IMG/VR virus record: IMGVR_UViG_3300044712_001255
Coordinates: 248,001 to 312,000 of that record
Direction: 5' to 3' (one strand)
Length of the DNA: 64,000 nucleotides
A program made the translations under genes and the position numbers. The notes under the pieces are model-generated. The model saw nothing but the letters and a program-made list of their open reading frames with translations. It searched no databases and was not told the origin of the DNA. Below are positions 768-36,702 of the stretch, piece by piece; the first letter of the stretch is position 1; every line of letters begins with the position of its first letter.

Positions 768-796
768 GTGTAGAAAAATCTTCTACATATTAGGAT
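768..796 (+). promoter_or_regulatory. putative phage promoter GTGTAG-17-TAGGAT
   Basis: Matches recurrent intergenic GTGTAV-N17-TANNNT motif. Confidence 0.55.
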
Positions 797-802
797 GATT
801 GT

Positions 803-949
803 ATGTTGAATCCAAATCTTGTGTTGTTGATGCTTACGTTCGCGCTTGCCGGGTTTCTTATCGGCGGTACGACGGGCGCTGTGAGTGGTGCTCTTGTTGT
901 TTGCATATTGGGACTTATTGCAAACTTTATTGACGTCTTTCGTCGATGA
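803..949 (+). CDS. small membrane protein (48 aa)
   Basis: Manual translation MLNPNLVLLMLTFALAGFLIGG..., hydrophobic; below ORF-track cutoff. Confidence 0.4.
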   Translation: MLNPNLVLLMLTFALAGFLIGGTTGAVSGALVVCILGLIANFIDVFRR

Positions 950-1284
950 TGCGTATGAGAACATTTTCAACTCTAACGTTCAAGCGAATCGTAACGCGAT
1001 CAAAGACGCATGAAGAAACGTGGTGCGCTCACGTTGGTACGAATCGTCTGTACTTGAAACGTACTCGTAGCAAATTGTTTCCAGGTGATACGTGGTCTCT
1101 TGAGGCTTGGGGTCGAGGCCACAATAGATTCGGCCTTGGTGATACGTGGATCGTTTACGATGATGGTGATTTTGACATCATTGATCATCACAGACAGTGC
1201 AGTGATGCGCAAGATCCTGATGTTTGGTTGGCACGTGATCCTGACGTGCTAATTGCTTTCTGGTTGAAGATACACGGAAGATGA
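946..1284 (+). CDS. hypothetical protein
   Basis: ORF with ATGA-type overlaps to neighbours. Confidence 0.5.
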   Translation: MMRMRTFSTLTFKRIVTRSKTHEETWCAHVGTNRLYLKRTRSKLFPGDTWSLEAWGRGHNRFGLGDTWIVYDDGDFDIIDHHRQCSDAQDPDVWLARDPDVLIAFWLKIHGR

Positions 1285-1808
1285 TCGATCAATCAAATTG
1301 GGCAAATACGCTTGAAAAGCTTGTGGGCGAAGAAGCGTCATTGTCAAATTGGGCGGCGTTTTTGTGGCGTAAACGGAAGCATACCCAAGTCAAAAAGATG
1401 CACGTAATTCATCTAAAGCATGAAGAACATAAAAATGCTTTTCGCCCTGGCGATGTTCTTCAGAACGTATACCGCCGCAGTGAGAAGGTGCGTGTTCAAT
1501 CATACGACGCAAAACGCGAACGTTATGATGTGGTGTATTGCGACTCAGGAACTTGTGGCTTTTACTCTGCGAGAAAACTTGAAGATGAATACACAAAAGT
1601 TTCATCTACGTTACAGACACGTCAGGAAAATTTGAATCTATTGCCAGGTATGATGTACAAGAACGTAAAAACTGGCGCATACATTTTCGTAGAAACAAAA
1701 CCAGATGCGAACATGAGAGTACTTGTGAACACTGATAATGGACATCGTACAATGAGCGTTGATGAATTTTGTGATGGTGACTGGCGTCGTGTTGATTTGC
1801 CTTATTAG
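1281..1808 (+). CDS. hypothetical protein
   Basis: 175-aa ORF coupled to upstream gene. Confidence 0.55.
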   Translation: MIDQSNWANTLEKLVGEEASLSNWAAFLWRKRKHTQVKKMHVIHLKHEEHKNAFRPGDVLQNVYRRSEKVRVQSYDAKRERYDVVYCDSGTCGFYSARKLEDEYTKVSSTLQTRQENLNLLPGMMYKNVKTGAYIFVETKPDANMRVLVNTDNGHRTMSVDEFCDGDWRRVDLPY

Positions 1809-1815
1809 TTAAACA

Positions 1816-1992
1816 ATGAGAATTACGCTCGGTGAGTTGAAGGCGCTTATTCATGAGGCGGCATCGAATGATCGTGGTAAGTGTCAAAAGTGTGGCAAAA
1901 TTGTGATGTTGACCGACGACGGGTTAATTGATCAACACGACGATTGTCGTGGGGCTGGCGTAAAACCTGTTTCGACGGCACCACTTACGTAG
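1816..1992 (+). CDS. small Zn-ribbon protein with N-terminal ITLGELxxLIxE motif
   Basis: Manual translation MRITLGELKALIHEA...CQKC...H..C. Confidence 0.55.
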   Translation: MRITLGELKALIHEAASNDRGKCQKCGKIVMLTDDGLIDQHDDCRGAGVKPVSTAPLT

Positions 1993-2037
1993 TTGCTTGC
2001 AAACGTTTACGGGTGATGTCCCTAAAAGGAAAATACG

Positions 2038-2373
2038 ATGCAGGAATTCATCAAATCAATACCCGTTCCTGTCTTCGTCATTGCGTATTCGTTGATGTAT
2101 ACGTTAGGTGAAGTGTTCTCAAAGTTGTGGGCTAACACTGGTAACATTCATAATTTTCTTGCTGCGTTTTCTACCTATTGCGTAGGTACGTTCATTTGGT
2201 TGATGTTGATACTGAACACGAATGAACTTGGAAGAATGGGATATCTCATCATCGCCCAAGGCACATTGGTGACATTCTTGCTTTCATTTTTCATTTTCTC
2301 AGAACGAATGTCAACTGCTCAGTACGTGGGCGTTGCGCTCGCCGCTATCTCTGTGTGGTTGTTATCGATGTAA
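2038..2373 (+). CDS. SMR/EamA-like (DMT superfamily) small membrane transporter
   Basis: 111 aa, four hydrophobic segments, Glu in TM1 (LGEVFSK), C-terminal FSERMSTAQYVGVAL. Confidence 0.6.
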   Translation: MQEFIKSIPVPVFVIAYSLMYTLGEVFSKLWANTGNIHNFLAAFSTYCVGTFIWLMLILNTNELGRMGYLIIAQGTLVTFLLSFFIFSERMSTAQYVGVALAAISVWLLSM

Positions 2374-2402
2374 CTGCACCATTTCTGTGATATACTTAAG
2401 AC

Positions 2403-2792
2403 ATGTTCAACTATCCGTCCGCAGGTGAGGGACACGTTCCCGCGTACCAGGTATCTGCTATTCCTTTCGTGTCTTCATCTACGATGGCTGTGGCTGAAAC
2501 GCAGCGAATTGATTTTGGTTTTCTAACAAGATTCTTGTTCGTAAAGAACACGGGAGCGGCTGCTACAAAACTCGCAGTTGGGTTCACCGCTAACGGCATG
2601 AATCCATCAAATGGGAATTTTTTCTATCTCGCGGGCTCTGAGAGTGTGAACGTAGACCTACGAGTCACTAGCATCTATCTCTCGAGTTCTGTGGGCACCC
2701 CAGGATATTCTGTTGTCGCCGGACTGACAGGTATTCCTGTGCAAAATGCGTCAATTCTAACCGGGTCGTCAGGCTATCCTGGCGTTGGATAA
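2403..2792 (+). CDS. putative virion-associated beta-rich protein
   Basis: Gly/Ser/Thr-rich 129 aa; preceded by ATACTTA late-type motif. Confidence 0.45.
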   Translation: MFNYPSAGEGHVPAYQVSAIPFVSSSTMAVAETQRIDFGFLTRFLFVKNTGAAATKLAVGFTANGMNPSNGNFFYLAGSESVNVDLRVTSIYLSSSVGTPGYSVVAGLTGIPVQNASILTGSSGYPGVG

Positions 2793-2794
2793 AG

Positions 2795-2989: not shown

Positions 2990-3769
2990 TTACCCAATGA
3001 TCTTTTTGATTATTCGCTTGATTGCTTCTGTCACAGTTTCTATACGCCCACCCTTACCACGAACGCGTGACATACCAAGATCTATCAACACCAATTCACC
3101 GGTGTCAGGTCGCTTCATCATATTTCCTGCGTGGTAGTCGTGGAAGTCTATTCCGATCGCAGTTAATGTCTGGAAAAGATCACGTAGGTGAAATTTTGTA
3201 ACAAGCAAGTTCCACGCTGCGTTTGCTTTCTTAACAAATTCTTGTGCTTCTGGCGTAGAGATTCCACCAAAATCTTTCTTAGCTTTCGCGGCAATGTGTG
3301 ACTTCGTCTTCTCTTTCACAACAGACCAATCACCACCGCTCTTCGCCATCCACAGGGGTACAGCTGTCGCTATTAGCGCGCTATTGAACTCTTTTCCGTC
3401 TGCGTCGCTGATTGGTTCCAGCTTTTCTTGCAATATCGCAAACACGTTGGAATCGCCTAACTGCCATACGCCGAATACTTTTACCACGCCAGGAACATCA
3501 CCACCCAGGCCTGTCAACGCAGCGGACGCCGCTGCTTCTTTTTCATCATTTGTAACTTTTAAGACCTTACCGTCAGGCGTTTCTAACGCTGTACCACGTG
3601 TGCCCGTCGCAATTGTCTTCAATGATGACGCGTCAGATACGCCAATCTTCTCAAGGAATTTTGGAAATTTTGATAGCAACTGCGTAGATTGTGATGCGTC
3701 GACTGGTGATGAATTGATTGCTTCTTTGATCAACTTGCGAATATGACCTACTGTGGTGACGAATCTCAT
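2990..3769 (-). CDS. protein kinase-like fold protein
   Basis: ATGTRG loop, KVLKVT, catalytic HDYHAGN, LIDLG; start re-assigned to MRFVTT. Confidence 0.75.
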   Translation of the reverse strand: MRFVTTVGHIRKLIKEAINSSPVDASQSTQLLSKFPKFLEKIGVSDASSLKTIATGTRGTALETPDGKVLKVTNDEKEAAASAALTGLGGDVPGVVKVFGVWQLGDSNVFAILQEKLEPISDADGKEFNSALIATAVPLWMAKSGGDWSVVKEKTKSHIAAKAKKDFGGISTPEAQEFVKKANAAWNLLVTKFHLRDLFQTLTAIGIDFHDYHAGNMMKRPDTGELVLIDLGMSRVRGKGGRIETVTEAIKRIIKKIIG

Positions 3770-3821
3770 AGGGTTACTTATGGTCGTGAGCGTATTCAAT
3801 GACAAGAAGCTAGATATTGAT

Positions 3822-4295
3822 ATGAAACCAACAATCATCTTCGTTTCTTCGAAATCGTGGGTGTCGAAGGCAATTCAATTCATCACCGGCGGCAACGTAA
3901 CACACGCAATAATCGGTGGATTTACAATCGAGAGTGCCGACATTGTTATGCATTCTGCAACGAGCGGCGTCGCATTTTTGCCTCGAGAAAAAGCTCTCGT
4001 TGGTTGTGACATTGTAGGTGAATTTGCAATTTCACATGACGTTAACATCAAGCAGTTACTGAACGATCTTGGCCAGCCGTACGATTATCTCGAAATGCTT
4101 GGATATGTGTGGGTTTATCTAGGAAAATTGATCAAACAACGTTGGCATAACCCACTGGGTTCGTCGCAAAGTTTCGTATGCGTTGAACTCATAATGTCAA
4201 TGAATCTTCCGGAATTAAATCAACTTGACAAACACGCAACGTCTCCGCAAGATCTGTACAACGCGTGTAGTCTGTGCTATGATAGGATAAAATAA
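3822..4295 (+). CDS. permuted papain-like amidase (YaeF/YiiX, NlpC/P60 superfamily)
   Basis: SKAIQFITGGNVTHA (His first), YDY, FVCVEL (Cys late): permuted order. Confidence 0.7.
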   Translation: MKPTIIFVSSKSWVSKAIQFITGGNVTHAIIGGFTIESADIVMHSATSGVAFLPREKALVGCDIVGEFAISHDVNIKQLLNDLGQPYDYLEMLGYVWVYLGKLIKQRWHNPLGSSQSFVCVELIMSMNLPELNQLDKHATSPQDLYNACSLCYDRIK

Positions 4296-5712: not shown

Positions 5713-5741
5713 GTGTAGACGTATCACGCGTAATGTATCAT
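5713..5741 (+). promoter_or_regulatory. putative phage promoter GTGTAG-17-TATCAT
   Basis: Recurrent motif; TG extended -10; ATG at 5748. Confidence 0.65.
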
Positions 5742-7363: not shown

Positions 7364-7410
7364 CCAGTGTAAATGTTTGAAACCGTGTATTATTCTATCA
7401 GTCACCTAAA

Positions 7411-9592: not shown

Positions 9593-9693
9593 GTGTAAAG
9601 GGTCAAGCGAGGCTATATACTAGAATCAACGCAACAGAAAATGCCACAGCGGTGGAAAATAGTTGTGTACAAGTGAAAGATTAATGATACTGT
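9593..9693 (+). promoter_or_regulatory. tandem promoters upstream of first RNA cluster
   Basis: GTGTAA(9593)-17-TATACT(9616) and GTGTAC(9665)-17-TACTGT(9688). Confidence 0.65.
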
Positions 9694-10009: not shown

Positions 10010-10055
10010 CCGGAACTAACGAGTTCTGATGTTCTCTGAAAACTGATCGTTGTAT

Positions 10056-10231: not shown

Positions 10232-10232
10232 C

Positions 10233-14630: not shown

Positions 14631-14878
14631 AGCGATATTCTAACTATTCGTTCGGTGATACACGATCAGTCTATGGCTTACTGTCAGCTTATGCAAGGAG
14701 AATACGTTAGGTGGCACGGGCAACTAGCCCTAGTTGTCTACGAATTTTGGGGCCTTGCAACGATTCGGTTGTGCGAGAAGCACTCGATCTACGAGGTTTT
14801 TTTGCACGATCTCAAACCTGTAACCCTTCAACCTGTCCGGTGTAATACCTGACTCAACGTGATAGGCTTGTCCTAGGC

Positions 14879-15258: not shown

Positions 15259-15287
15259 GTGTACAATCGCACACCGTGTATTATAAT
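15259..15287 (+). promoter_or_regulatory. putative phage promoter GTGTAC-17-TATAAT
   Basis: Perfect -10 hexamer with recurrent GTGTAV -35. Confidence 0.7.
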
Positions 15288-15318: not shown

Positions 15319-15705
15319 ATGGCAAAGAAGCTGAAGAAGAACGCAAAGTCCGAGACCGTTGTCGAGAACGTGGCCGCCGTCACTGTTGACGCTGCCCCTG
15401 CAAACCTGTTTGAGGCGTTCATTGATCTGAGTGATCCTGAGCTGTCTCAGGCAATCGAGCGGCTTGAGGCTGAGCGTAACAGCTGCCTGGCGCATCGAGA
15501 GGATCCTATGGAGATTGAGATTGAGAAGTGTTTCGCTCAGCGTGAGTGGAGACTGCGTGCTGAGCGTTGGAAGGCGCATTGCGCGTATCTCGATGCAGAC
15601 GCAGAGTCTCTTCGAGAGGATCAGTACCCGATCGCAGACCTCGATAATTGGGAGTTCGTCTCAATTTGCAACGGTTCGCGAGCGCCTCGCGTTCAGCGCG
15701 CCTAG
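15319..15705 (+). CDS. hypothetical acidic protein
   Basis: Strong SD AAGGA; 128 aa. Confidence 0.6.
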   Translation: MAKKLKKNAKSETVVENVAAVTVDAAPANLFEAFIDLSDPELSQAIERLEAERNSCLAHREDPMEIEIEKCFAQREWRLRAERWKAHCAYLDADAESLREDQYPIADLDNWEFVSICNGSRAPRVQRA

Positions 15706-15716: not shown

Positions 15717-16532
15717 ATGAAGCAAACGAGTAAAGAACCAAAGATAGTACAAACGTATCTCGACTCATTGACACGTTTGCCGCAGCTTTCGCACCCTGAT
15801 CTTGTGAACCTTTTCAAGGTTCTTGAAGATACTGAAGAGAAGCTTGCGGCAAAGGAACGAGCTCGCAAGAAGGTCATTGAGTGTAATCTTCGTCTTGTCG
15901 TATCAATCGCAAAGAAGTACTACAAGAACTACAAGTTGCCCATTGAAGACCTCATTCAAGAAGGCAACATTGGACTCATGAAAGCCGTAGAGCGATTTGA
16001 CTACAAGAAGGGTTGGCGGTTTTCAACGTACGCTACATGGTGGATTCGCCAAGCAATCGGTCAGCATGTTCAAAAGCGACGTCGAACCGTGCGATTGCCT
16101 GCGCATGCCGCTGCCGTTCAACGCAAGTTGATTCAGGCTGCTGATGATTTCAAGCAACTGCATGGTACTAATCCTTCGAGCGAAGAACTGCAGGAAGTCG
16201 TCAAGGCTTCAGAGACTGTGGTGCGAGCAACGATGTTTGCGTCTCGAGGAACTGTGTCATTGAATGATCCTGCGTATGCAGCTGCCGGTGGACCTACCAA
16301 GACAATTGCTGATGTTCTTGAGGATGAAGATCCGGGTGCTTGCCCATTCACCAACTGTGCTGACGTAGAGATTGTGAACATTGTTCGACAAATCATGAAA
16401 ACGTTGACGGTGAAAGAGTCTGCGATCCTACGTCTGAGGTTTGGCCTCATTGAGGATGATACGAATTCTGAAGAGTTCCCAATCACTCAAGATGAGATTG
16501 ACAACCTTGACGAAGGACGTGGTTTGACGTAG
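15717..16532 (+). CDS. sigma70-family RNA polymerase sigma factor lacking region 4.2
   Basis: NLRLVVSIAKKY, DLIQEGNIGLMKAVERFDYKKGWRFSTYATWWIRQAI; ends after LTVKESAILRLRFGL. Confidence 0.9.
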   Translation: MKQTSKEPKIVQTYLDSLTRLPQLSHPDLVNLFKVLEDTEEKLAAKERARKKVIECNLRLVVSIAKKYYKNYKLPIEDLIQEGNIGLMKAVERFDYKKGWRFSTYATWWIRQAIGQHVQKRRRTVRLPAHAAAVQRKLIQAADDFKQLHGTNPSSEELQEVVKASETVVRATMFASRGTVSLNDPAYAAAGGPTKTIADVLEDEDPGACPFTNCADVEIVNIVRQIMKTLTVKESAILRLRFGLIEDDTNSEEFPITQDEIDNLDEGRGLT

Positions 16533-17785: not shown

Positions 17786-17820
17786 GTGTAGACAACGTAA
17801 TCATGAGATAGACTGGTCTC

Positions 17821-19447: not shown

Positions 19448-19538
19448 ATCAATAAAATCAATACCTTGTACACGAGTGCAGGTTTACTTTGCCCATGGTA
19501 GAGTCAGACCATAGGCAAGGCAAAGGACACAAACACAC

Positions 19539-23371: not shown

Positions 23372-23400
23372 GTGTACTTGTGTGCGAGACATGATAACCT
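23372..23400 (+). promoter_or_regulatory. putative promoter GTGTAC-17-TAACCT for second RNA cluster
   Basis: Recurrent motif. Confidence 0.6.
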
Positions 23401-27557: not shown

Positions 27558-27562
27558 AATAC

Positions 27563-27642: not shown

Positions 27643-27647
27643 CATAC

Positions 27648-27720
27648 ACCAACATGGCTGAGTGGTTGAGGCGCTCGCTTCATAAGCGAGTTTACGTGGG
27701 TTCGATTCTCACTGTTGGTA
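27648..27720 (+). tRNA. tRNA-Met/Ile2(CAT)
   Basis: CTCGC-TTCATAA-GCGAG. Confidence 0.85.
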
Positions 27721-27724
27721 CAAC

Positions 27725-28443: not shown

Positions 28444-28876
28444 GTACGCATTTTTGAGCAGCTTTCATACGTCCACGGTGCGATGGGACGGTAGACTCTG
28501 GAAGTCGGTTGAACACGCGTATCAGGCAGCAAAGACGCTTGATGCCAAACAACGAGACATGATTCAGGCTGCAAAAACTCCTGGCGAAGCAAAGCGGATT
28601 GGGCAAGCTATCACGCTTCGACCTGATTGGGACGACGTAAAGTTGAACATCATGCGTGAATTGATTCATGAAAAGTTTATGAATCCTTTCCTGCGTCACA
28701 GGTTGCTTGAAACGGGTGAAGCAGAGTTGATTGAAATCAACTTTTGGAACGATAAATTTTGGGGCGTCTGTCGCGGTGAAGGAAAAAATCACTTAGGCAG
28801 AATTCTCATGGATGAGCGAGACAGCATACGAGAAGAATTGATCGCAGATAACACCACCGTGGAGGAACTTCGGTAG
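28412..28876 (+). CDS. NADAR family protein (YbiA-like)
   Basis: FLSSF, SVEHAYQAAK, AKRIG, LLETG, DKFWG, GKNHLGRILM. Confidence 0.85.
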   Translation: MTQQITRFINEYAFLSSFHTSTVRWDGRLWKSVEHAYQAAKTLDAKQRDMIQAAKTPGEAKRIGQAITLRPDWDDVKLNIMRELIHEKFMNPFLRHRLLETGEAELIEINFWNDKFWGVCRGEGKNHLGRILMDERDSIREELIADNTTVEELR

Positions 28877-28936
28877 ACTCGATAGACTCAGACTCTATTG
28901 TCGCAAGATGTGCAGGTTCGAATCCTGTCGGTGGTA
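28853..28936 (+). tRNA. tRNA-Leu(CAG), overlaps NADAR 3' end
   Basis: ATAGA-CTCAGAC-TCTAT, long variable arm. Confidence 0.85.
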
Positions 28937-28974
28937 CGAGTGTAGATACGTACAACATATTGTATCATGAGGTC

Positions 28975-29265
28975 ATGATGGAACAAGAAGACATGCAGAC
29001 GGTGAATGTGCCTGAGCGTCGACCTGACGCTGTCCTACTTGAGACTGGCGAGTTTGAAGTCGTTAGAAAGCTTCGCTCTCGCATCCTCGATCAACACGCC
29101 AAGATGTACCCGTGGGTGTATATCACCAGGGTTGGATACGGAGACGATGTGAAGTACGTCCTCTCGGTTGCGAATGGTTTCGGCGGAAAGCTGTCATCTA
29201 GCGAGCTTGAGAAGATTGCTGCCTCGGTCTCTGAAGAGCTGGAAAATCTCACGTTGCCTTCATAG
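28975..29265 (+). CDS. hypothetical protein
   Basis: ORF after promoter GTGTAG(28940)-17-TATCAT; stop inside tRNA-Arg. Confidence 0.5.
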   Translation: MMEQEDMQTVNVPERRPDAVLLETGEFEVVRKLRSRILDQHAKMYPWVYITRVGYGDDVKYVLSVANGFGGKLSSSELEKIAASVSEELENLTLPS

Positions 29266-29327
29266 TAAAACGGAAATAATGGTGCGCTTCGAACGCACAG
29301 TTCTAGGTTCGAATCCTAGTGAGGGCA
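29256..29327 (+). tRNA. tRNA-Arg(TCG)
   Basis: GTGCG-CTTCGAA-CGCAC. Confidence 0.85.
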
Positions 29328-29338
29328 CACCATTATTT

Positions 29339-29411
29339 CTCTTCGTAGTTCAGTGGATAGAACATCGCTTTCCTAAAGCGAATGTCATGTGTTCAAATCA
29401 CATCGAAGAGA
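29339..29411 (+). tRNA. tRNA-Arg(CCT)
   Basis: TCGCT-TTCCTAA-AGCGA. Confidence 0.9.
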
Positions 29412-29415
29412 CTAC

Positions 29416-29489
29416 GTCCCCATAGCTCAGCTGGATAGAGCGTCGGCCTTCTAAGCCGAATGTCGTAGGTTCGAATCCTACTGGGGATG
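29416..29489 (+). tRNA. tRNA-Arg(TCT)
   Basis: TCGGC-CTTCTAA-GCCGA. Confidence 0.93.
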
Positions 29490-29528
29490 CTAAGTGTAGA
29501 CGAACATAAAGTGTGGTAAGTTGAAATT

Positions 29529-30065: not shown

Positions 30066-30305
30066 ATGGAAAAGAGTAAAAAGCAACAGGATATTGAAGG
30101 CAAGTTGGTGGCGTGGCGTAAGCTTACTCCCGCGGAGCAGCTCGCTGATTTGGACCGTCGCCTCGGTAAGGGCGTTGGCGCCGCAAAGCAGCGCGCTCGC
30201 ATTCAGGCAAAGCTCGATAAGCAGCCCGCCAAGGCTGAGGCGATTGCTACTGACGTTGTCAAGGAGCGTCCTCAGCGCCCGAAGCGGCAGAAGAAGGACA
30301 AGTGA
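30066..30305 (+). CDS. small basic hypothetical protein
   Basis: SD AGGAG; Lys/Arg-rich. Confidence 0.55.
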   Translation: MEKSKKQQDIEGKLVAWRKLTPAEQLADLDRRLGKGVGAAKQRARIQAKLDKQPAKAEAIATDVVKERPQRPKRQKKDK

Positions 30306-31363
30306 CAAATCGATCACTCACTGTCATTCAACAGGGTGCGCTTCGATGTGTCTCTTCTGAGGGATACAACTACACGTTTGATACCGAGACGGGTCGGTTT
30401 GCTCGATGGGGCAAGACTGCTAATGACGATCCCATCATGGCTCCACACCCAGAAATTGCAGATATTGAAGTAACCACTATCTGCGCTGGCGTTGGTGGAA
30501 AGCTGTGTGGGCACTGTTATAAGTCCAACACTCGCAGCGGATCGAACATGTCACTCGATACCTACAAGCGAGTTTTTGATCGCATCGCAGCGTCAGGCAC
30601 TCTCACGCAGGTTGCATTTGGCGCAGACAGCACTGGACGAGCAAATCCTGATCTCATTGAGATGATGAAATACACTCGTTCAAAGGGAGTTGTACCAAAC
30701 ATCACAATTGCCGACATTGATGACGACATGGCCCAGCAACTTGCAAGCGTTTGTGGTGCTGTGGCCGTGAGTCGATATGCTGACAAGAACTATTGCTATG
30801 ATTCTGTGGCGAGGTTGTCAGCAGCTGGTCTCAAGCAGATCAACATTCATTTGATGATCAGCCGCGAGACGTTTGATTGGGCATATGAGACGATCAAGGA
30901 CGTTCATTCTGATCCTCGACTAAAGGGGTTGAAGGCAGTAATCTTGCTGTCTCTCAAGCAAAAAGGTCGGGGAACTCGGTACAACACTCTCGTTCAGTCG
31001 CAGTTCGCAAAGCTTGTGCGAGAGTCCGTGGATTACAACGTTCAAATTGGATTTGACAGTTGCAGTTCATTGAAGTTCTTGAGAACACTCAAGAAGAATC
31101 ATCCGGATTACCCCCGCATCAAGCAGCAGGTCGAGCCGTGTGAAAGCACTCTGTTTTCAGTGTTTGTGAATCACAAGGGTGAGACTTTCCCGTGTTCCTT
31201 CACGGAAGGCACGCCAAATTGGGAAAGCGGAATTGATACACTTGCGTATGATGATTTCAATGATGTGTGGAATCACACCAGGATGCAAGACTTTAGGGCA
31301 AAATTGCTTGCGTCAGACAAGAATGAACATGAATGCCGAGAGTGCACGTTATTCAACGTGTGA
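30302..31363 (+). CDS. radical SAM protein with SPASM/twitch-like C-terminus
   Basis: CX7CX2C (CAGVGGKLCGHC), C..V..GETFPCSF, CREC. Confidence 0.85.
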   Translation: MTNRSLTVIQQGALRCVSSEGYNYTFDTETGRFARWGKTANDDPIMAPHPEIADIEVTTICAGVGGKLCGHCYKSNTRSGSNMSLDTYKRVFDRIAASGTLTQVAFGADSTGRANPDLIEMMKYTRSKGVVPNITIADIDDDMAQQLASVCGAVAVSRYADKNYCYDSVARLSAAGLKQINIHLMISRETFDWAYETIKDVHSDPRLKGLKAVILLSLKQKGRGTRYNTLVQSQFAKLVRESVDYNVQIGFDSCSSLKFLRTLKKNHPDYPRIKQQVEPCESTLFSVFVNHKGETFPCSFTEGTPNWESGIDTLAYDDFNDVWNHTRMQDFRAKLLASDKNEHECRECTLFNV

Positions 31364-32443: not shown

Positions 32444-32517
32444 GTGCGGCGACTGTAGCTGGTGAAACTGCCTGCTCGACAAGCAGGATATGGTGGGTTC
32501 GATCCCCACGCTGCACA
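32444..32517 (+). tRNA. tRNA-Val(GAC), C33 variant
   Basis: CCTGC-TCGACAA-GCAGG. Confidence 0.75.
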
Positions 32518-32570
32518 CGGGAGTGTAACATACGCATCCGTTGGTATAGATTCAATAATCGGAGGTCTCA

Positions 32571-32957
32571 ATGAACGAAGTGAAGCAGGTGATCGTAGTT
32601 CGTAAAGATCTCTCAATGAGGAAAGGAAAAATGTGTTCTCAAGTTGCTCACGCAGCTATGAAGTTCATCCTTGATAACAATGACGCTGATAAAGCGGATA
32701 AAATTCAGGTCGATTTGACGGCGGCCGAGGCAGAATGGGTGAGTGGTACATTCACAAAAATTGTTGTAGGTTGTGATTCTGAGGATGAGCTTGAACAGCT
32801 TATTCTAAAGGCTCAAGTGATGGGCGTCACAGTTCACAAGATCATTGACAATGGCAATACAGAATTTCATGGTGAGAAAACACTGACATGCGCGGCCTTC
32901 GGACCTGCGTATACAGATGAGCTCAATCCAATCACAGGACACCTAAAGTTGCTGTGA
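32571..32957 (+). CDS. pth2: peptidyl-tRNA hydrolase, Pth2 type
   Basis: KQVIVVRKDLSMRKGKMCSQVAHA, KIVV, IDNGNTEF, T..AFGP...ITGHLKLL. Confidence 0.9.
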   Translation: MNEVKQVIVVRKDLSMRKGKMCSQVAHAAMKFILDNNDADKADKIQVDLTAAEAEWVSGTFTKIVVGCDSEDELEQLILKAQVMGVTVHKIIDNGNTEFHGEKTLTCAAFGPAYTDELNPITGHLKLL

Positions 32958-32961
32958 ATTT

Positions 32962-33033
32962 GGCCCACGCACCAGCTGGTGACGGTACTTGGCTTACACC
33001 CAAGCATGCACAGTTCGATCCTGCGGTGGGCTA
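32962..33033 (+). tRNA. tRNA-Val(TAC)
   Basis: CTTGG-CTTACAC-CCAAG; G8. Confidence 0.8.
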
Positions 33034-33035
33034 CG

Positions 33036-33260
33036 ATGTCAGAAGATAAGACATATATCTTTTTTGGTAGTGGAAGCAATCGTTCGTTGGTGGCTCAAGA
33101 CCTCGAGGGTGCCCTCGTTCAATTGGTGAGCATAAAGGGTAGGCTTCCCAATACAATGGGCGCTGTTCCCAAGGGTGACTTTCGAAGAACTAAAGAAAAT
33201 GACTATGAATTCTTCCCAAATGGAGAATTTTCTGAAACACTGTTTGAAACAACATGGTAG
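33036..33260 (+). CDS. hypothetical protein
   Basis: MSEDKTYIFFG..., between tRNAs. Confidence 0.4.
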   Translation: MSEDKTYIFFGSGSNRSLVAQDLEGALVQLVSIKGRLPNTMGAVPKGDFRRTKENDYEFFPNGEFSETLFETTW

Positions 33261-33282
33261 AACGTACTAAAAGATAAATCAT

Positions 33283-33370
33283 AGAAGGTTGGCCGAGTGG
33301 TCTAAGGCGACGATTTTGAAAATCGTAGGTCCTCAAAAGGGACCCGGGAGTTCGAATCTCTCACCTTCTG
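33283..33370 (+). tRNA. tRNA-Ser(TGA)
   Basis: ACGAT-TTTGAAA-ATCGT, long variable arm, G73. Confidence 0.92.
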
Positions 33371-33381
33371 CTATGTACTTT

Positions 33382-33466
33382 GGAAGTGTGTCCGAGAGGC
33401 TTAAGGTAGCTGTTTGCTAAACAGCCGGCGGTAAAACGCCCGCAGGTTCGATTCCTGCCACTTCCG
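33382..33466 (+). tRNA. tRNA-Ser(GCT)
   Basis: GCTGT-TTGCTAA-ACAGC. Confidence 0.92.
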
Positions 33467-33469
33467 TGA

Positions 33470-33712
33470 ATGAAATTTACAATTAAAACACTTGTGAGTG
33501 AAAAGAACTTCACACTCGAGCACTTCGAAGGCTACATCATCTGTCTTCGCAAAGAAGTCGCAGGTGTGAAGGGATTCATGTTGCTTGGGTTTCTTCAAGA
33601 ACTCTGGATACCAATTTCATTATTGACATTGTCACAAATCAAAGTATTGTTGAAAGTGATGAGAGATCGTAAGAAAAGATATCCATTGGTGATTTCAAAA
33701 AAACGTAAGTAA
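33470..33712 (+). CDS. hypothetical protein
   Basis: 80-aa ORF between tRNA-Ser genes. Confidence 0.4.
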   Translation: MKFTIKTLVSEKNFTLEHFEGYIICLRKEVAGVKGFMLLGFLQELWIPISLLTLSQIKVLLKVMRDRKKRYPLVISKKRK

Positions 33713-33713
33713 T

Positions 33714-33800
33714 GGAAATGTGGCCGAGAGGTTTAAGGCACCAATTTCGAAAATTGGCAGGGGCTACCGCCCCTCATAGGTTCGAATCCTATTGCTTCTG
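33714..33800 (+). tRNA. tRNA-Ser(CGA)
   Basis: CCAAT-TTCGAAA-ATTGG. Confidence 0.88.
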
Positions 33801-33954
33801 CTGGAGTAAAGTATGTTACGCAAAATTCTACGTTGGCTTGATGAATATGCATTTTTACGATATGGACATCAATTCACTACGGTTAAGTACGAAGAACCAA
33901 TTTCAACTTGTTTGATTCCTAAAGAAATCATCTTAACTGACGAGGACATTACGT

Positions 33955-34176
33955 ATGGAAAACAGCTCGCAGAACAACTCGCAAAAAGAAGCGCTAACGC
34001 AGGATATCGATAATGATATCGCGTGGCTAAAGAAAAAGAGCCACCAGAAACTCAAGACAGAACAGGAGACAAGAGAGGCTCGTCGTATCTTCAAACGCCT
34101 GACGTCTAAGAAGCAACGTAAATATGGTAAGAAGATTATAGAAAATGTTGATGAGGACGATGAAGCGATCGATTGA
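33955..34176 (+). CDS. small charged hypothetical protein
   Basis: 73-aa ORF. Confidence 0.4.
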   Translation: MENSSQNNSQKEALTQDIDNDIAWLKKKSHQKLKTEQETREARRIFKRLTSKKQRKYGKKIIENVDEDDEAID

Positions 34177-34189
34177 TACTTAAAACATC

Positions 34190-34591
34190 ATGGGCGTACC
34201 GACGAGAGACACATTGGTCGAAAATGTAGCGCGGGGATGCTACGAATTGCAACTGATTCAATATGAACTCAAGGGAATTTTTCTGCCGCATTGGGACAAC
34301 AATGATCCCAACCTTGACGCAAGCGCAAGAGCGCTTTTAGAAGCATCAAAGACAGATATGTTGGGATTCACATATGCATCTCTCGCAGGATGGGATCCAA
34401 TACGCCAACACGAATCGTGGTTATTTGATCAGGCAGTTCTTGGATGGACATACGGTGATTCATATGATCCCGTAAATAAAAAAGATCCACGCATGGTTCA
34501 TTGGGATGAGTACCCACAAGAGAAACAAATGGAAATTATGCAAGCGTTCAAGGTGATTCGTACGCTTTGTGCGCTTATTGGACTAATTTAG
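34190..34591 (+). CDS. RyR-domain protein
   Basis: QHESW..GWTYG..YD..KKDPRMVHWDEYP. Confidence 0.65.
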   Translation: MGVPTRDTLVENVARGCYELQLIQYELKGIFLPHWDNNDPNLDASARALLEASKTDMLGFTYASLAGWDPIRQHESWLFDQAVLGWTYGDSYDPVNKKDPRMVHWDEYPQEKQMEIMQAFKVIRTLCALIGLI

Positions 34592-34676
34592 TAGGGTGGC
34601 CGAGAGGCTTAAGGCACCGCGCTGGAAACGCGGAGGTCCCGTAAGGGACCCGCACGTTCGAATCGTGTCTCTACTG
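34590..34676 (+). tRNA. tRNA-Ser(GGA)
   Basis: CCGCG-CTGGAAA-CGCGG. Confidence 0.92.
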
Positions 34677-34694
34677 CGGTGGAATAGTTAAGAC

Positions 34695-34928
34695 ATGCGT
34701 ATCAAGGTTGGTGAACTTCGTAAGTTAGTGCGTGAATCGTTGGAAGGGCCAACAGCCTGGAGTGATTTGCCACGAATTGAGCAGATCAAGTCAGAATATT
34801 CGGACATCTACAAGGAAAAATTTGGCATTCGTCCAAGATGGAAGCTAGCAGAGCTTGAACAGATGTCGTTAGAAGACGCAGAGGCTGTTCTTCAGGAACT
34901 TCTTGACACGCCGGGTGATGAATTTTGA
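34695..34928 (+). CDS. small protein with IKVGELRKLVRE motif
   Basis: N-terminal motif shared with other late genes; ATAGTTA upstream. Confidence 0.55.
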   Translation: MRIKVGELRKLVRESLEGPTAWSDLPRIEQIKSEYSDIYKEKFGIRPRWKLAELEQMSLEDAEAVLQELLDTPGDEF

Positions 34929-34957
34929 GTGTAAGTGTTTGAAACACCAGATATAAT
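34929..34957 (+). promoter_or_regulatory. putative promoter GTGTAA-17-TATAAT for Gly/Leu tRNAs
   Basis: Perfect -10, recurrent -35. Confidence 0.7.
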
Positions 34958-34965
34958 GGTGTTAT

Positions 34966-35038
34966 GCGGTAGTAGTTCAGTTGGTAGAACGTCTGCTTGC
35001 CATGCAGAAGGTCGCGGGATCGTACCCCGCTTACCGCT
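34966..35038 (+). tRNA. tRNA-Gly(GCC)
   Basis: TCTGC-TTGCCAT-GCAGA, U73. Confidence 0.88.
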
Positions 35039-35039
35039 C

Positions 35040-35110
35040 GCGGAATTGGTATATTGGTCGTGCCTTGGGTTTCCAACCCAAAGAAACCGTTTCGATTACG
35101 GTATTCCGCT
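35040..35110 (+). tRNA. tRNA-Gly(TCC)
   Basis: TTGGG-TTTCCAA-CCCAA, U73. Confidence 0.88.
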
Positions 35111-35139
35111 CATAAGAATGCAGATTGTTTGAAAATTAC

Positions 35140-35222
35140 GCTATCGTGGTGGAACTGGCAGACACGCTAGTCTCAAAAACTGGTGCCCAAAAGGCGTGTG
35201 GGTTCGACTCCCACCGATAGCA
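35140..35222 (+). tRNA. tRNA-Leu(CAA)
   Basis: CTAGT-CTCAAAA-ACTGG. Confidence 0.92.
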
Positions 35223-35223
35223 C

Positions 35224-35307
35224 GGCCCCTTGTTGGAATTGGTAGACAACGTCGATTTAAAATCGATTGCGATAAAAAGCGTCTCGGTTCGAGTCCGGGA
35301 GGGGCTA
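35224..35307 (+). tRNA. tRNA-Leu(TAA)
   Basis: GTCGA-TTTAAAA-TCGAT. Confidence 0.92.
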
Positions 35308-35311
35308 CAAA

Positions 35312-35632
35312 ATGTCGAATCGCAAGAAGGAAATAAGAGAAGTATTTCGACAATGCGTTTTTTCTCGAGACAAATTTAGATGTGTGATGTGTGGAATTGC
35401 AGGAACGCAAGATACGCTTGATGCACATCATATTACTGATCGTAAATTGATGCCCAATGGTGGGTATGTTGTTTCAAATGGAATTAGTCTTTGCGCTGAT
35501 TGTCACATAAAGGCTGAAGAATTTCATATATCTGGAGGCGATCATGTTGACATCGGGTGGGCGCCCGTTGACCTTTATAAGAGAATCAACTCTTCATTTC
35601 AAAGAGCATTCATTGATAGCGAAAAATTATGA
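35312..35632 (+). CDS. HNH endonuclease
   Basis: CVMC..LDAHHI..NGISLCADCH. Confidence 0.7.
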   Translation: MSNRKKEIREVFRQCVFSRDKFRCVMCGIAGTQDTLDAHHITDRKLMPNGGYVVSNGISLCADCHIKAEEFHISGGDHVDIGWAPVDLYKRINSSFQRAFIDSEKL

Positions 35633-35934
35633 GCGATGGTAGCAAATTACACATTCAATCTCTTCTAGAAGGAATTCCCGTCAAATTTCGTCCTCACGGC
35701 AATAGCATGGTGCCAATCATTTACAGCGGTCAACTTGTGACGATCTCCCCCTTGACGCGAGAACCAGAAGTTGGTGACGCAGTGCTATGCAAGGTTCGAG
35801 GGCGACAAATGTTGCATAAGGTAATTGCAATTGGCAGTGACGGACGTTTCCAAATTGGGAACAATCATGGTCTCATCAACGGGTGGTGCACCAGACAAAA
35901 TATTTTTGGCGTCCTTACCTGTGTCGAACCATGA
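35629..35934 (+). CDS. S24/S26 peptidase-like protein
   Basis: GNSMVPII..G...VLCK....LHKV. Confidence 0.6.
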   Translation: MSDGSKLHIQSLLEGIPVKFRPHGNSMVPIIYSGQLVTISPLTREPEVGDAVLCKVRGRQMLHKVIAIGSDGRFQIGNNHGLINGWCTRQNIFGVLTCVEP

Positions 35935-35964
35935 AAATTCTTCCTGTCGACATAATTGAAAGAT

Positions 35965-36126
35965 ATGGCCAATTTCAAGAGAGGTCGCGCAAAGAACAGA
36001 AGACACGGATGCCTGCTTTGCAAGCCGTGGAAGATGAACGGCGGCAAGAAGAAGTTGTGCAAACACAAGTATCGTTGCGAATCGATCTCTATGCGTGAGC
36101 AGATCAACGAACTAGATGAACGTTGA
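35965..36126 (+). CDS. small basic Cys-containing protein (53 aa)
   Basis: Manual translation MANFKRGRAKNRRHGCLLCKPWKMNGGKKK... Confidence 0.45.
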   Translation: MANFKRGRAKNRRHGCLLCKPWKMNGGKKKLCKHKYRCESISMREQINELDER

Positions 36127-36625
36127 CAATACACCCCCACTCAAGTGCTTCTTTTGCCAATAACTTTGCGCCATTGATGTGAAAGTTATTGTCATCATAG
36201 AATTCCACTTGACGTAGGCCACGTTGCTTGATCAATTGCGCAATATATCGCGCCTTTCCAGGTGGAATGTCTGCTTTCTCGCCGAGTGCCATGACTTCGC
36301 ATCCCGGCATATTGTGCATATCAAGGAACTCCTTGGGTCCATTGGGAGATCCTCGGGCAGTCATCACCATCACGCCTTCAGGACCCAATCGCTTGTATGC
36401 GTCCTTTGCTATGTCGAGAATCTCATCATTCTCGTGAAATTCGGGCGCAAGCGACTGGAATTGACTCATATCGTATGAGTACTGTGTTTCGTCCATGCGA
36501 TGTTCTCGCCATTGTCGAGAATCTAGCCATTGGACCTCACCAGTGTCGAGGTCAGTTACCTTGATGCGTGCATCAGAGACACACAACGTATCATCAAAGT
36601 CGAAAATGTAAAGCTTGTTTGGCAT
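36104..36625 (-). CDS. HAD-superfamily phosphatase (RNA-repair type)
   Basis: IFDFDDTL, VMTAR, K, FYDD. Confidence 0.72.
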   Translation of the reverse strand: MPNKLYIFDFDDTLCVSDARIKVTDLDTGEVQWLDSRQWREHRMDETQYSYDMSQFQSLAPEFHENDEILDIAKDAYKRLGPEGVMVMTARGSPNGPKEFLDMHNMPGCEVMALGEKADIPPGKARYIAQLIKQRGLRQVEFYDDNNFHINGAKLLAKEALEWGCIVNVHLVR

Positions 36626-36702
36626 CTAGCTTACCTAGCAAATCCTATCCCTCTTATACGCGGTGTACTCGAGCGTCATTGTGTGGTAATGTACCTATAA
36701 AT

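What the first reader, a model, noticed from the sequence alone, without database searches (positions are those of the whole stretch)
768..36692. Recurrent non-canonical promoter class GTGTAV-N17-TANNNT
Intergenic copies with a 17-nt spacer at 768, 5713, 9593, 9665, 14840, 15259, 17786, 23372, 28940, 29494, 34929 (variant GTGCAG at 19476; 18-nt spacer at 7367, 32523, 36663). The -10 is sigma70-like, often with TG, but the -35 is GTGTA(G/C/A), not TTGACA. Inference: a phage-specific early/middle promoter read by the window's own sigma system or by an unusual host sigma.
Basis: partly seen in the sequence, partly recalled or inferred. Interest (0 to 1): 0.6.

Follow-up and report, generated by a model that had tools for sequence, protein, structure and literature searches.

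The report
Phage promoter class making leaderless mRNAs
The recurring GTGTA-N17-TANNNT signal is a real promoter class of an uncultured 324-kb soil phage. It is placed so that transcription should begin at the start codon itself, giving leaderless mRNAs, but whether the host sigma or the phage's own truncated sigma plus a small sigma-region-4 protein reads its odd -35 box is still open.

Summary
GTGTAV-N17-TANNNT occurs 14 times in the window against 1.06 expected. Eleven of the 14 sites are intergenic, and 12 are on the gene strand.

It is the strict core of a wider class: GTG(T/A/C)A, then 17 nt, then a G-rich extended -10 and TAnnnT. There are about 100 sites in the 324-kb phage contig, densest just upstream of the window.

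In 47 of 469 called genes the -10 hexamer ends exactly 6 nt before the ATG, so the predicted +1 is the A of the start codon (leaderless mRNAs). A few sites sit 8-9 nt before mature tRNA 5' ends.

The same design recurs in related jumbo phages from soil and groundwater (GC 36-61%) that share this sigma family.

The window's sigma (15717-16532) has a primary-type region 2 but lacks the region 4.2 helix that reads -35. A conserved 86-aa protein elsewhere in the genome carries a primary-sigma-like 4.2 helix-turn-helix. ORF 17029 shows nothing sigma-like.

I put about 0.4 on the phage's two-piece sigma after a host start-up, and 0.35 on host primary sigma alone. No RNA data exist.

The parts
768..796 (+). 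Class promoter GTGTAG-N17-TAGGAT. Predicted +1 = 803 = A of the ATG of a small ORF (leaderless).
2368..2396 (+). Variant promoter ATGTAA-N17-TATACT. Predicted +1 = 2403 = ATG of ORF 2403-2792 (leaderless).
4265..4293 (+). Class promoter GTGTAG-N17-TAAAAT inside the 3' end of ORF 3753-4295. ATG of the next gene is at 4303 (leader about 3 nt).
5713..5741 (+). Class promoter GTGTAG-N17-TATCAT. Predicted +1 = 5748 = in-frame ATG of ORF ending at 6218 (leaderless).
7367..7396 (+). Class promoter with 18-nt spacer, GTGTAA-N18-TATTCT. Gene ATG at 7411 (leader about 8 nt).
9593..9621 (+). Class promoter GTGTAA-N17-TATACT, the first of two tandem promoters ahead of the tRNA array at 9926-13578.
9665..9693 (+). 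Class promoter GTGTAC-N17-TACTGT with TGn extended -10, 233 nt ahead of the tRNA array.
14840..14868 (+). Class promoter GTGTAA-N17-TAGGCT (TGn). Gene ATG at 14879 (leader about 4 nt).
15259..15287 (+). Promoter of the sigma operon: GTGTAC-N17-TATAAT, with a 25-nt leader carrying a Shine-Dalgarno site, to ATG 15319. Its position is conserved in relatives as xTGTAC-N17/18-TANNNT.
15319..15705 (+). 128-aa ORF directly preceding sigma. It holds the same position in relatives. No family match.
15717..16532 (+). Phage sigma-70-family protein, 271 aa. Regions 1.2-2-3-4.1 are primary-sigma-like. It ends in an acidic tail where the region 4.2 recognition helix should be.
17786..17814 (+). Class promoter GTGTAG-N17-TAGACT. 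Predicted +1 = 17821 = ATG of the ATP-dependent DNA ligase (leaderless).
19476..19504 (+). Variant GTGCAG-N17-TAGAGT. A 28-nt leader runs to ATG 19539 (DUF2201 metallopeptidase / VWA-like protein).
23372..23400 (+). Class promoter GTGTAC-N17-TAACCT (TGn), ahead of the tRNA array that starts at 23723.
28940..28968 (+). Class promoter GTGTAG-N17-TATCAT, starting 3 nt after tRNA-Leu (28853-28937). Predicted +1 = 28975 = ATG (leaderless).
29494..29522 (+). Class promoter GTGTAG-N17-TAAGTT (TGn), starting 4 nt after tRNA-Arg (29416-29490). Predicted +1 = 29529 = ATG (leaderless).
32523..32552 (+). Class promoter with 18-nt spacer, GTGTAA-N18-TAGATT, just after a tRNA (32444-32517). A leader with GGAGG runs to ATG 32571.
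34929..34957 (+). Class promoter GTGTAA-N17-TATAAT. Predicted +1 = 34964, 2 nt before the mature 5' end of tRNA-Gly (34966). This shows the element is a transcription signal, not a translation signal.
36663..36692 (+). Class promoter with 18-nt spacer, GTGTAC-N18-TAATGT (TGn). ATG at 36703 of an RNA-ligase-like gene (leader about 4 nt).

Best explanation
These sites are genuine sigma-70-family promoters of an uncultured jumbo phage. The phage record is a 324-kb contig that encodes no RNA polymerase beta subunit.

The anatomy is a -35 box GTG(T/A/C)A(A/G), a 17-nt spacer (18 in relatives), a G-rich extended -10 (G at -14, often TGn) and TAnnnT. The -10 hexamer usually ends exactly 6 nt before the ATG. 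Transcription should therefore start at the A of the start codon and produce leaderless mRNAs. At a few sites the RNA would start 1-2 nt before a mature tRNA 5' end.

The class serves the non-structural part of the genome: small ORFs, tRNA arrays, the sigma operon and the ligases.

My committed reading of who reads it is as follows.
1. Host core polymerase with host primary sigma fires these promoters first and weakly. The box keeps the canonical T-34 and G-33 and an extended -10 G. These first promoters include the sigma operon and the gene of an 86-aa sigma-region-4 protein.
2. The phage's own sigma then takes over. Its region 2 is nearly identical to that of primary sigmas, so it should read TAnnnT, but its region 4.2 recognition helix is missing.
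3. The 86-aa protein supplies the -35-reading helix-turn-helix.

Shown: the motif, its statistics, its placement, its conservation across the clade, and the domain make-up of both proteins. Inferred: the start sites, the timing, and which protein touches the -35 box.
For: Promoter status:
- 14 sites against 1.06 expected.
- 11 of 14 intergenic against 10.8% of bases; spacer controls flat.
- GTGTA ranks first among all 5-mers and spacings.
- The refined matrix finds 101 sites against 8-14 in shuffles, with no conservation in the spacer, so this is not duplicated DNA.
- 53 sites lie in genome 220-250 kb, all on the gene strand.

Leaderless geometry:
- TANNNT ends exactly 6 nt before the called start in 47 of 469 genes; other gaps give 3-13.
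- Those 47, chosen without regard to the -35, give T 36/47, G 36/47 and A 30/47 at the same box.
- 6 of 17 window sites are exact, and the predicted +1 is A in 14 of 17.
- Promoters sit 8-9 nt before tRNA 5' ends in G000, G001 and G002.

Clade conservation:
- In the complete relative G001, GTGAA is found 54 times against 4.6 expected, and TANNNT-6-ATG 119 times against about 25-45. G002 and G003 behave likewise.
- Across 47 sigma-flank loci there are 244 sense against 39 antisense sites, and 100 with N6-ATG against 10 with N9-ATG.
- The sigma-operon promoter keeps its position in 19 of 25 loci.

Phage reader:
- There is a single sigma region 2 gene and no beta subunit gene.
- The sigma ends in a conserved acidic tail where region 4.2 should be.
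- The 86-aa protein's profile hits only region 4.2 of primary sigmas in the PDB.
- It is present in both relatives that are at least 90% complete, and in 4 of 5 records searched.
- Both region-4-less sigmas and stand-alone region 4 proteins form large viral clusters.
- Complex prediction gives weak support: 0.50 against a best control of 0.00, partner pLDDT at least 72, at least 81% contact agreement. In the tool's calibration the pass mark was reached by 58 of 80 solved complexes and 2 of 110 mismatched pairs, but at scores of 0.60 or under by only 7 of those 80 solved complexes and by both mismatches that passed.
- Canonical sigma-70 promoters are not enriched.
- In relatives the box is long and sharp (CAGTGTAAG, CGGTGCAAA), more than a host -35 usually is.
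Against: - There are no RNA data, so no start site has been observed.
- The sigma operon itself sits behind a class promoter.
- Dense one-promoter-per-small-gene clusters look like classical host-read early regions (an analogy from memory with T4).
- The box keeps T-34 and G-33 at canonical spacing, and its first base drifts with GC content (G in high-GC members, T or A in low-GC members). Any primary sigma could plausibly read it.
- The 86-aa protein has Cys where sigma-70 has R588 and Met where it has E585. By my recollection of sigma-70 genetics, R588 reads G-33, which is the best conserved base here. That is awkward for a simple homology mapping.
- A second, -35-less motif (ATAGTTA) would suit a sigma without region 4 at least as well.
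- A more distant phage with a truncated sigma (G011, 87% complete) has no detectable 86-aa homologue.
- The complex score is in the band the tool calls more often wrong than right.
- The fold of the 86-aa protein was predicted only at pLDDT 58.
Confidence: 0.4

Rival explanations
1. Host primary sigma alone reads the class. These would be early promoters with a phage-specific variant of the -35 hexamer (xTGyAA in place of TTGACA), helped by the extended -10 G. The phage's region-4.2-less sigma would instead serve a different, -35-less class (ATAGTTA, late). The 86-aa protein would be an unrelated regulator or a competitor for the polymerase flap.
For: - T-34 and G-33 are kept at canonical spacing, and G at -14 is 80%.
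- The sigma operon and the 86-aa gene themselves lie behind class-like promoters.
- 53 promoters in 30 kb of small ORFs look like an early region.
- The first base of the box follows GC content, so it is probably not specifically read.
- ATAGTTA is intergenic in 14 of 17 cases, lies upstream of structural-region genes, has no -35 partner and recurs in G001.
- Actinobacterial primary-sigma promoters have a similar look: TTGNCA with GNTANANTNG in Corynebacterium (PMC3917453).
- More than 20% leaderless genes are inferred in Actinobacteria and Deinococcus-Thermus from a TA signal about 10 bp upstream of the start (PMC3160421).
Against: - Canonical TTGACA promoters are not enriched at all.
- A at -31 replaces the C that primary sigma prefers.
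- In relatives the box is 9-10 bp long and nearly invariant.
- The design is conserved across phages of 36-61% GC and tracks the sigma family.
- It leaves unexplained why a sigma lacking 4.2 and a stand-alone primary-type 4.2 domain are conserved together.
Confidence: 0.35
2. Sigma appropriation. Host primary sigma reads the -10, while a phage protein replaces or remodels host region 4 and reads the GTGyAA box. The best candidate is the 86-aa region-4-like protein. This would resemble T4 middle promoters with AsiA and MotA. The phage sigma would not be needed for this class.
For: - The box sits at a fixed distance from a canonical -10.
- The conserved stand-alone region 4.2 homologue has changed specificity residues.
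- Such proteins are widespread in tailed phages.
- Phage factors that displace region 4 are known: gp39 of P23-45 and AsiA (PMC7403470).
Against: - No MotA or AsiA homologue was looked for or seen.
- The box is at -35, not centred at -30, and is not the MotA box sequence.
- The co-conserved truncated sigma would be left without a role in this class.
Confidence: 0.12
3. It is not a promoter class. The pattern would be chance, duplicated upstream DNA of paralogous genes, an operator or terminator element, or a translation signal.
For: - Some spacers contain small inverted repeats (for example at 768 and 34929).
- The 223-242 kb cluster shares a very similar -10 and start region.
Against: - None of 100 shuffles reached the count.
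- Spacer positions carry no information, so this is not copied DNA.
- The sites show strict strand and intergenic bias, and the pattern is specific to one spacing.
- The same element precedes tRNA genes, which are not translated.
- The design is conserved in relatives with about 55% identical sigma and different GC content.
Confidence: 0.03

Closest known systems
Bacterial sigma-70-type -35/-10 promoters, including extended -10 (TGnTATAAT)
   Same: Two boxes 17-18 nt apart. The -10 is TAnnnT with A-11 and T-7. G at -14 is common. T-34 and G-33 of the -35 hexamer are kept. Purine at +1 and C at -1.
   Different: The -35 consensus is GTG(T/A/C)A(A/G), and CAGTGTAAG-like in relatives, not TTGACA. 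Canonical sites are not enriched. Placement relative to the start codon is fixed.
Leaderless genes of Actinobacteria, Deinococcus-Thermus and mycobacteria (PMC3160421, PMC4633059)
   Same: A TA-rich -10 signal about 10 bp upstream of the start codon, no Shine-Dalgarno site, and the start codon at the 5' end of the RNA.
   Different: Here it is a phage programme: about 10% of genes in this phage and about 90 in relative G001. It is coupled to a sharply conserved -35 box. The host is unknown, and other genes of the phage do use Shine-Dalgarno leaders.
T4 early promoters (host sigma-70, phage-specific -35 variant) and T4 middle promoters (MotA box plus AsiA)
   Same: Phage-specific upstream box combined with a host-type -10, with many promoters in front of small early genes. 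This comparison is from my own knowledge and was not tested here.
   Different: The box sequence and position differ. No MotA or AsiA was identified. This phage also carries its own primary-like sigma.
Multi-polypeptide sigma factors: T4 gp55 with gp33, SPO1 gp33/gp34, Bacillus SigO-RsoA (from my own knowledge)
   Same: Promoter recognition functions are divided between a region-2-bearing protein and a second protein.
   Different: Here the region-2 protein is nearly a full primary sigma lacking only 1.1 and 4.2. The second protein is a primary-type 4.2 helix-turn-helix with an N-terminal four-cysteine segment. Their physical association has only weak in-silico support.
Thermus phage P23-45 gp39 system (PMC7403470)
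   Same: A phage shifts polymerase away from host -35-dependent promoters by acting on sigma region 4 and the flap.
   Different: gp39 favours -35-less extended -10 promoters. This class has a strong -35-position box.

Membership tests
Sigma-70-type bipartite promoter | -10 hexamer TAnnnT with A at -11 and T at -7 | tested here: met
   T 98%, A 92% and T 73% in the refined matrix of 101 sites.
Sigma-70-type bipartite promoter | Second box 16-18 nt upstream of the -10 | tested here: met
   Enrichment appears only at the 17-nt spacer (5-mer at 18; z = 10), with a minor share at 18. It is flat at 16, 19 and 21.
Sigma-70-type bipartite promoter | -35 consensus TTGACA | tested here: not met
   The consensus is GTG(T/A/C)A(A/G); only the TG is shared. 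TTGACA/TATAAT-like sites number 20 against 25.6 expected.
Sigma-70-type bipartite promoter | Intergenic, sense orientation upstream of genes | tested here: met
   11 of 14 sites are intergenic against 10.8% of bases (p = 6e-9). 12 of 14 lie on the gene strand.
Sigma-70-type bipartite promoter | Transcription starts 6-8 nt downstream of the -10 | not testable with these tools
   No RNA run holds the sequence. The start is inferred only from the fixed 6-nt gap to the ATG.
Leaderless mRNA genes | -10 element ends 6-7 nt before the start codon, leaving no room for a Shine-Dalgarno site | tested here: met
   47 of 469 genes at a gap of exactly 6, against 3-13 at other gaps. In relatives the counts are 91, 45, 43 and 17 genes.
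Leaderless mRNA genes | Mapped 5' end at the first base of the start codon | not testable with these tools
   No RNA data.
Primary-like (group 1/2) sigma-70 protein, for ORF 15717-16532 | Region 2 (core binding, -10 recognition) | tested here: met
   Pfam Sigma70_r2, E = 4e-22. It aligns to SigA and RpoD structures at about 1e-40.
Primary-like (group 1/2) sigma-70 protein, for ORF 15717-16532 | Region 4.2 helix-turn-helix that reads the -35 hexamer | tested here: not met
   The protein ends in an acidic tail where the recognition helix should be. The Pfam region 4 match is only E = 0.097 and partial. The same C-terminus is conserved in 19 of 19 aligned homologues.
T4 middle promoter (MotA/AsiA sigma appropriation) | MotA box (a/t)(a/t)(a/t)TGCTT(t/c)A centred near -30 | tested here: not met
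   The box sequence is GTGyAA at -35 to -30. The MotA box sequence is recalled from memory.
T4 middle promoter (MotA/AsiA sigma appropriation) | MotA and AsiA homologues present | not tested
   No search was made for them.
Two-polypeptide sigma factor | Separate genes for the -10-reading and -35-reading modules in one genome | tested here: met
   A sigma without 4.2, plus an 86-aa region-4 protein at G000:12232-12492(-): Pfam 5e-8 and PDB profile hits to sigma region 4.2 only. The two occur together in G001, G002, G003 and G005.
Two-polypeptide sigma factor | The two polypeptides bind each other or the polymerase and act together | tested here: inconclusive
   The complex prediction gives weak support: 0.50 against a best control of 0.00. 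The tool rates this band as more often wrong than right.

The most novel reading that the evidence does not exclude
A large clade of tailed phages, jumbo phages of soil, rhizosphere and groundwater among them, uses a naturally split primary-type sigma factor. One polypeptide carries regions 1.2 to 4.1. A separate protein of about 85 aa, with four conserved cysteines, carries region 4.2 with changed specificity residues. Together they would redirect host core polymerase to a private -35 box (GTGyAA), placed so that about a hundred phage genes are expressed as leaderless mRNAs. That would be a combined takeover of transcription and translation, alongside a near-complete phage tRNA set.
Probability: 0.3. 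Interest if true: 0.85.

Novelty: new variant of a known kind. Interest (0 to 1): 0.66.

Why it matters
Promoters of uncultured jumbo phages are almost unknown. This gives a testable, clade-wide promoter model that improves gene-start annotation: many starts are fixed by the -10 hexamer. It predicts that roughly a tenth of the phage's genes are leaderless, which bears on host range and on how phages compete for ribosomes.

It also pairs two widespread but uncharacterised viral protein families: sigmas without region 4.2, and stand-alone region 4 proteins. If the pairing is real, it would be a new way of building promoter specificity and a compact orthogonal transcription part for synthetic biology.

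Tried and rejected
- **No near-identical phage.** A megablast of 10 kb against 50,697 phage records found nothing. Only distant baseplate relatives turned up: an uncultured 484-kb phage, Flavobacterium phage immuto and Microcystis phage Mel-JY01.
- **Pattern search with the single sigma.** It found no viral relatives; the alignment-based search did.
- **ORF 17029-17328 and the other small ORFs around sigma.** No family match.
- **Terminase_6C search of the genome.** Nothing found, so I did not place the phage taxonomically.
- **RNA evidence.** The only holders are two DNA runs from rhizosphere metagenomes.
- **Covariation between the recognition helix of the 86-aa protein and the box.** Only one divergent lineage was available. 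G005 has helix TTRMQICRVER and box TTGAAC. Two further records had the common helix but too few promoters. This is suggestive only.
- **Structure of the 86-aa protein.** Mean pLDDT was 58, too poor for a fold search, so none was run.
- **Complex of sigma with the 86-aa protein.** Weak support only.
- **Literature.** I found no paper describing this box or a split phage sigma in four full-text searches. The P23-45 transcription paper was not held, so I make no claim about leaderless transcripts in that phage.
- **TTGACG next to the sigma-operon promoter.** I considered that it marks a canonical promoter and rejected this: the spacing to any TAnnnT is 20-23 nt.

Full report
**Setting**

The window is bases 248001-312000 of a single 324,468-bp viral contig from IMG/VR. 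It is linear, CheckV estimates it as 86% complete, and its GC content is 46.6%. The DNA is held by rhizosphere metagenome runs.

No phage record is near-identical. Only distant baseplate relatives exist. The genome has no RNA polymerase beta gene and a single gene with sigma-70 region 2, so it must use host core polymerase.

The window holds 45-48 tRNA genes, the sigma gene, DNA and RNA ligases, and a radical-SAM/SPASM protein on the + strand up to about 38 kb. From 38 kb onward a tail/baseplate block and glycosyltransferases lie on the - strand.

Yes.

- GTGTAV-N17-TANNNT occurs 14 times against 1.06 expected, and no shuffle reached 14.
- A 16-nt spacer gives the chance number. An 18-nt spacer gives 3 against 0.89, which is not significant alone, but all three sites lie directly upstream of genes.
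- 11 of the 14 are intergenic although only 10.8% of bases are (p = 6e-9). Shifted-spacer controls show no such bias.
- An unbiased scan of every 5-mer at nine distances from TANNNT ranks GTGTA at this distance first (33 against 6.7). GTGAA, GTGCA and their shifted versions also appear among the top 30.
- Canonical TTGACA/TATAAT look-alikes are not enriched: 20 against 25.6 +/- 6.2.
- The two minus-strand matches lie antisense inside ORFs and match the chance expectation.

Printing the sites showed an ATG six bases after the -10 hexamer again and again.

Over all 469 genes I called with a simple codon-usage caller, TANNNT ends exactly 6 nt before the start codon in 47. Every other gap gives 3-13. 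With the hexamer at -12 to -7, a 6-nt gap puts +1 on the A of the ATG. That is the geometry of leaderless mRNAs, and a TA signal about 10 bp upstream of the start is the accepted in-silico mark of such genes (PMC3160421).

Those 47 sites were chosen without looking at the -35 region. They still give the same box at the same distance: T 36/47, G 36/47, T or A 37/47, A 30/47.

A matrix seeded on the strict sites converges on 101 sites genome-wide, against 8-14 in shuffles. The consensus is GTG(T/A/C)A(g), an uninformative spacer, G at -16, -14 and -13, TAtAnT, gagaCC, ATG. The empty spacer excludes copied DNA.

53 sites lie in genome 220-250 kb, all on the gene strand, just upstream of the window. 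The window holds the tail of the class.

In the window:
- six promoters are exactly leaderless (+1 at 803, 2403, 5748, 17821, 28975 and 29529);
- four leave 3-8 nt;
- three have leaders with a Shine-Dalgarno site (15259, 19476, 32523);
- four serve tRNA arrays.

At 34929 the predicted start is 2 nt before the mature tRNA-Gly 5' end. Similar cases occur in relatives. The element therefore acts in transcription, not translation.

**Relatives**

The sigma has more than a hundred homologues of 260-300 aa at 53-61% identity. Some lie on contigs of 309-370 kb from soil and groundwater.

In sigma-flank loci from IMG/VR:
- The closer group (47 loci, 613 kb, GC 36-61%) has 244 sense against 39 antisense GTG[TAC]A-N18/19-TANNNT sites. 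100 of them have N6-ATG, against 10 with the N9-ATG control.
- The group with more distant sigmas has only 6 sites with N6-ATG.

Whole genomes confirm this.
- In the complete 369-kb relative G001 (56% GC, 58 tRNAs), GTGAA occurs at the box position 54 times against 4.6 expected. TANNNT-6-ATG occurs 119 times on the gene strand against about 25-45 for other gaps.
- G002 and G003 behave likewise.
- The spacer is one base longer in these relatives.

In individual relatives the box is long and sharp (CAGTGTAAG, CGGTGCAAA). In low-GC relatives it begins with T or A (TTGCAA, ATGCAA). The core conserved across the clade is therefore TG.AA, and GTGTAV is a local flavour.

The promoter of the sigma operon keeps its position in 19 of 25 loci, as xTGTAC-N17/18-TANNNT 446-628 nt before the sigma ATG. 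By my rough uniform-composition estimate, chance would give fewer than two.

Because these phages are kin, shared features are partly inherited. The strand, spacing and gap controls are what carry the argument.

**The sigma**

ORF 15717-16532 has region 2 (Pfam 4e-22) and a weak region 3. It aligns with SigA and RpoD structures from region 1.2 to region 4.1, with a near-identical region 2.3-2.4 core.

It ends 10-11 residues after the point where the region 4.2 recognition helix begins, and the residues there are acidic. The same C-terminus is conserved in all 19 homologues aligned, so it is not a truncation artefact. Many more distant phage sigmas also stop after region 4.1. The nearest Atlas clusters are viral and carry regions 1.2, 2 and 3 only.

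This sigma should therefore read TAnnnT but cannot read a -35 box in the usual way. ORF 17029 has nothing sigma-like.

**A candidate -35 reader outside the window**

The only strong region 4 match in the genome is an 86-aa ORF at G000:12232-12492 on the minus strand. A profile of it and its homologues hits only region 4.2 of primary sigmas in the PDB.

Relative to the E. coli helix:
- Arg at the R584 and R586 positions, Ile at I587 and Gln at Q589 are kept;
- E585 is Met and R588 is Cys, and both are invariant in the family;
- four cysteines in the N-terminal half are also invariant.

Homologues are present in both relatives that are at least 90% complete, and in 4 of 5 records searched. A more distant phage with a truncated sigma shows none. 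Small stand-alone region 4 proteins form many viral clusters.

A complex prediction of sigma with this protein gave weak support: 0.50 against a best control of 0.00, partner pLDDT at least 72, at least 81% contact agreement. The tool warns that this band is more often wrong than right.

The gene's own promoter is TTGTAC, TTGAAC or GTGTAC, then N17/18, then TACATT (TACTGT in one genome), with a Shine-Dalgarno leader, in 4 of 5 genomes.

One divergent lineage (G005) has a changed helix, and its 17 leaderless genes carry TTGAAC rather than GTGyAA. This is a single case.

**A second motif**

ATAGTTA, often as cTGATAGTTAa, occurs 17 times against about 55 expected from base composition. 14 of the 17 are intergenic, and 12 lie in sense orientation upstream of genes at 33-194 kb. 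There is no -35 partner.

It recurs in G001 before genes with Shine-Dalgarno leaders, before leaderless ATGs and before tRNAs. It may be a -35-independent, possibly late, class.

**Who reads the GTGyAA class?**

Sequence alone cannot decide.

For the phage system:
- no canonical promoter enrichment;
- a long, sharp, private box;
- conservation across phages of very different GC content;
- the complementary pair of a sigma without 4.2 and a free 4.2 domain;
- the weak complex support.

For host primary sigma:
- the sigma operon itself sits behind such a promoter;
- the dense one-promoter-per-small-ORF layout looks early;
- T-34, G-33 and G-14 are canonical;
- the first base drifts with GC content;
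- the ATAGTTA class would suit a sigma without region 4;
- the look resembles actinobacterial primary-sigma promoters, TTGNCA with GNTANANTNG (PMC3917453).

I commit to a start-up by host sigma followed by the phage's two-piece sigma as the main reader, at about 0.4. Host sigma alone gets 0.35, and an appropriation-type mechanism using host sigma plus the 86-aa protein gets about 0.12.

That these are promoters placed to give leaderless transcripts I hold at about 0.9.

**Novelty**

I found no description of this box, of the mass use of leaderless genes by a jumbo phage, or of a split primary-type phage sigma in four full-text searches. The library is incomplete, so absence there is weak evidence.

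The promoter is a new variant of a known kind. The split-sigma reading, if true, would be the more notable result.

Noticed in passing
window 14641-14647 (-) and 34684-34690 (+); G000 33-194 kb; G001: A second conserved motif, ATAGTTA (often cTGATAGTTAa). It occurs 17 times in the genome against about 55 expected. 14 are intergenic, 12 lie in sense orientation upstream of structural-region genes, and there is no -35 partner. It also occurs in the complete relative G001 before genes and tRNAs. It is a candidate -35-independent (late?) promoter class.
   Followed up: partly
G000:12232-12492 (-), outside the window (L002:1489-1746:-): An 86-aa protein with four invariant cysteines followed by a helix-turn-helix that matches only region 4.2 of primary sigmas. 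Met and Cys stand at the sigma-70 E585 and R588 positions. It is conserved in related jumbo phages and belongs to large viral clusters.
   Followed up: partly
window 9926-13578, 23723-27721, 28853-29490, 32444-35308: 45 tRNA genes by ARAGORN and 46 by Rfam (three of them not called by ARAGORN), in four arrays on the + strand. This is a near-complete decoding set. Several class promoters start 3-6 nt after a tRNA 3' end.
   Followed up: partly
G000:313007-313079 (-), about 1 kb beyond the window's end; G002:228801: ARAGORN calls a suppressor tRNA with anticodon tta (reads TAA) in this phage, and a tRNA-Pyl in relative G002. I did not examine whether stop-codon reassignment is in play. All ORF work here used table 11.
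   Followed up: no
window 15240-15265 and relatives L013-L059: The sigma-operon promoter box is xTGTAC, with the palindrome TGTACA in the window, and has a variable first base across relatives. The promoter of the 86-aa gene also has TGTAC or TGAAC. Both have Shine-Dalgarno leaders, unlike most of the class. This may mark a distinct regulatory subclass.
   Followed up: partly
L061-L086 (IMG/VR loci): Many more distant phage sigma-70-family proteins also end shortly after the LRLRFG motif of region 4.1. Sigmas without region 4.2 therefore seem widespread in large phages. Their flanks lack the leaderless design.
   Followed up: partly
window 768-796, 34929-34957, 7367-7396: Some promoter spacers contain short inverted repeats, for example GTAGAA...TTCTAC at 768 and GTGTTT..AAACAC at 34929. 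This is not a consistent feature of the class, and its meaning is unknown.
   Followed up: no
window 38375-58896 (-), 60376-62779 (-), 62801-63724 (-): A tail-fibre and baseplate block with proteins of 1573, 1458 and 1159 aa, mostly without family matches. It also holds two glycosyltransferases and a homing-endonuclease-like ORF. No class promoters serve this block.
   Followed up: no
window 30302-31363 (+), 19539-21179 (+): A SPASM-domain (radical-SAM type) protein and a DUF2201 metallopeptidase/VWA-like protein lie among the promoter-served genes. An AAA_5 ATPase and DNA ligase are syntenic with sigma in relatives.
   Followed up: no
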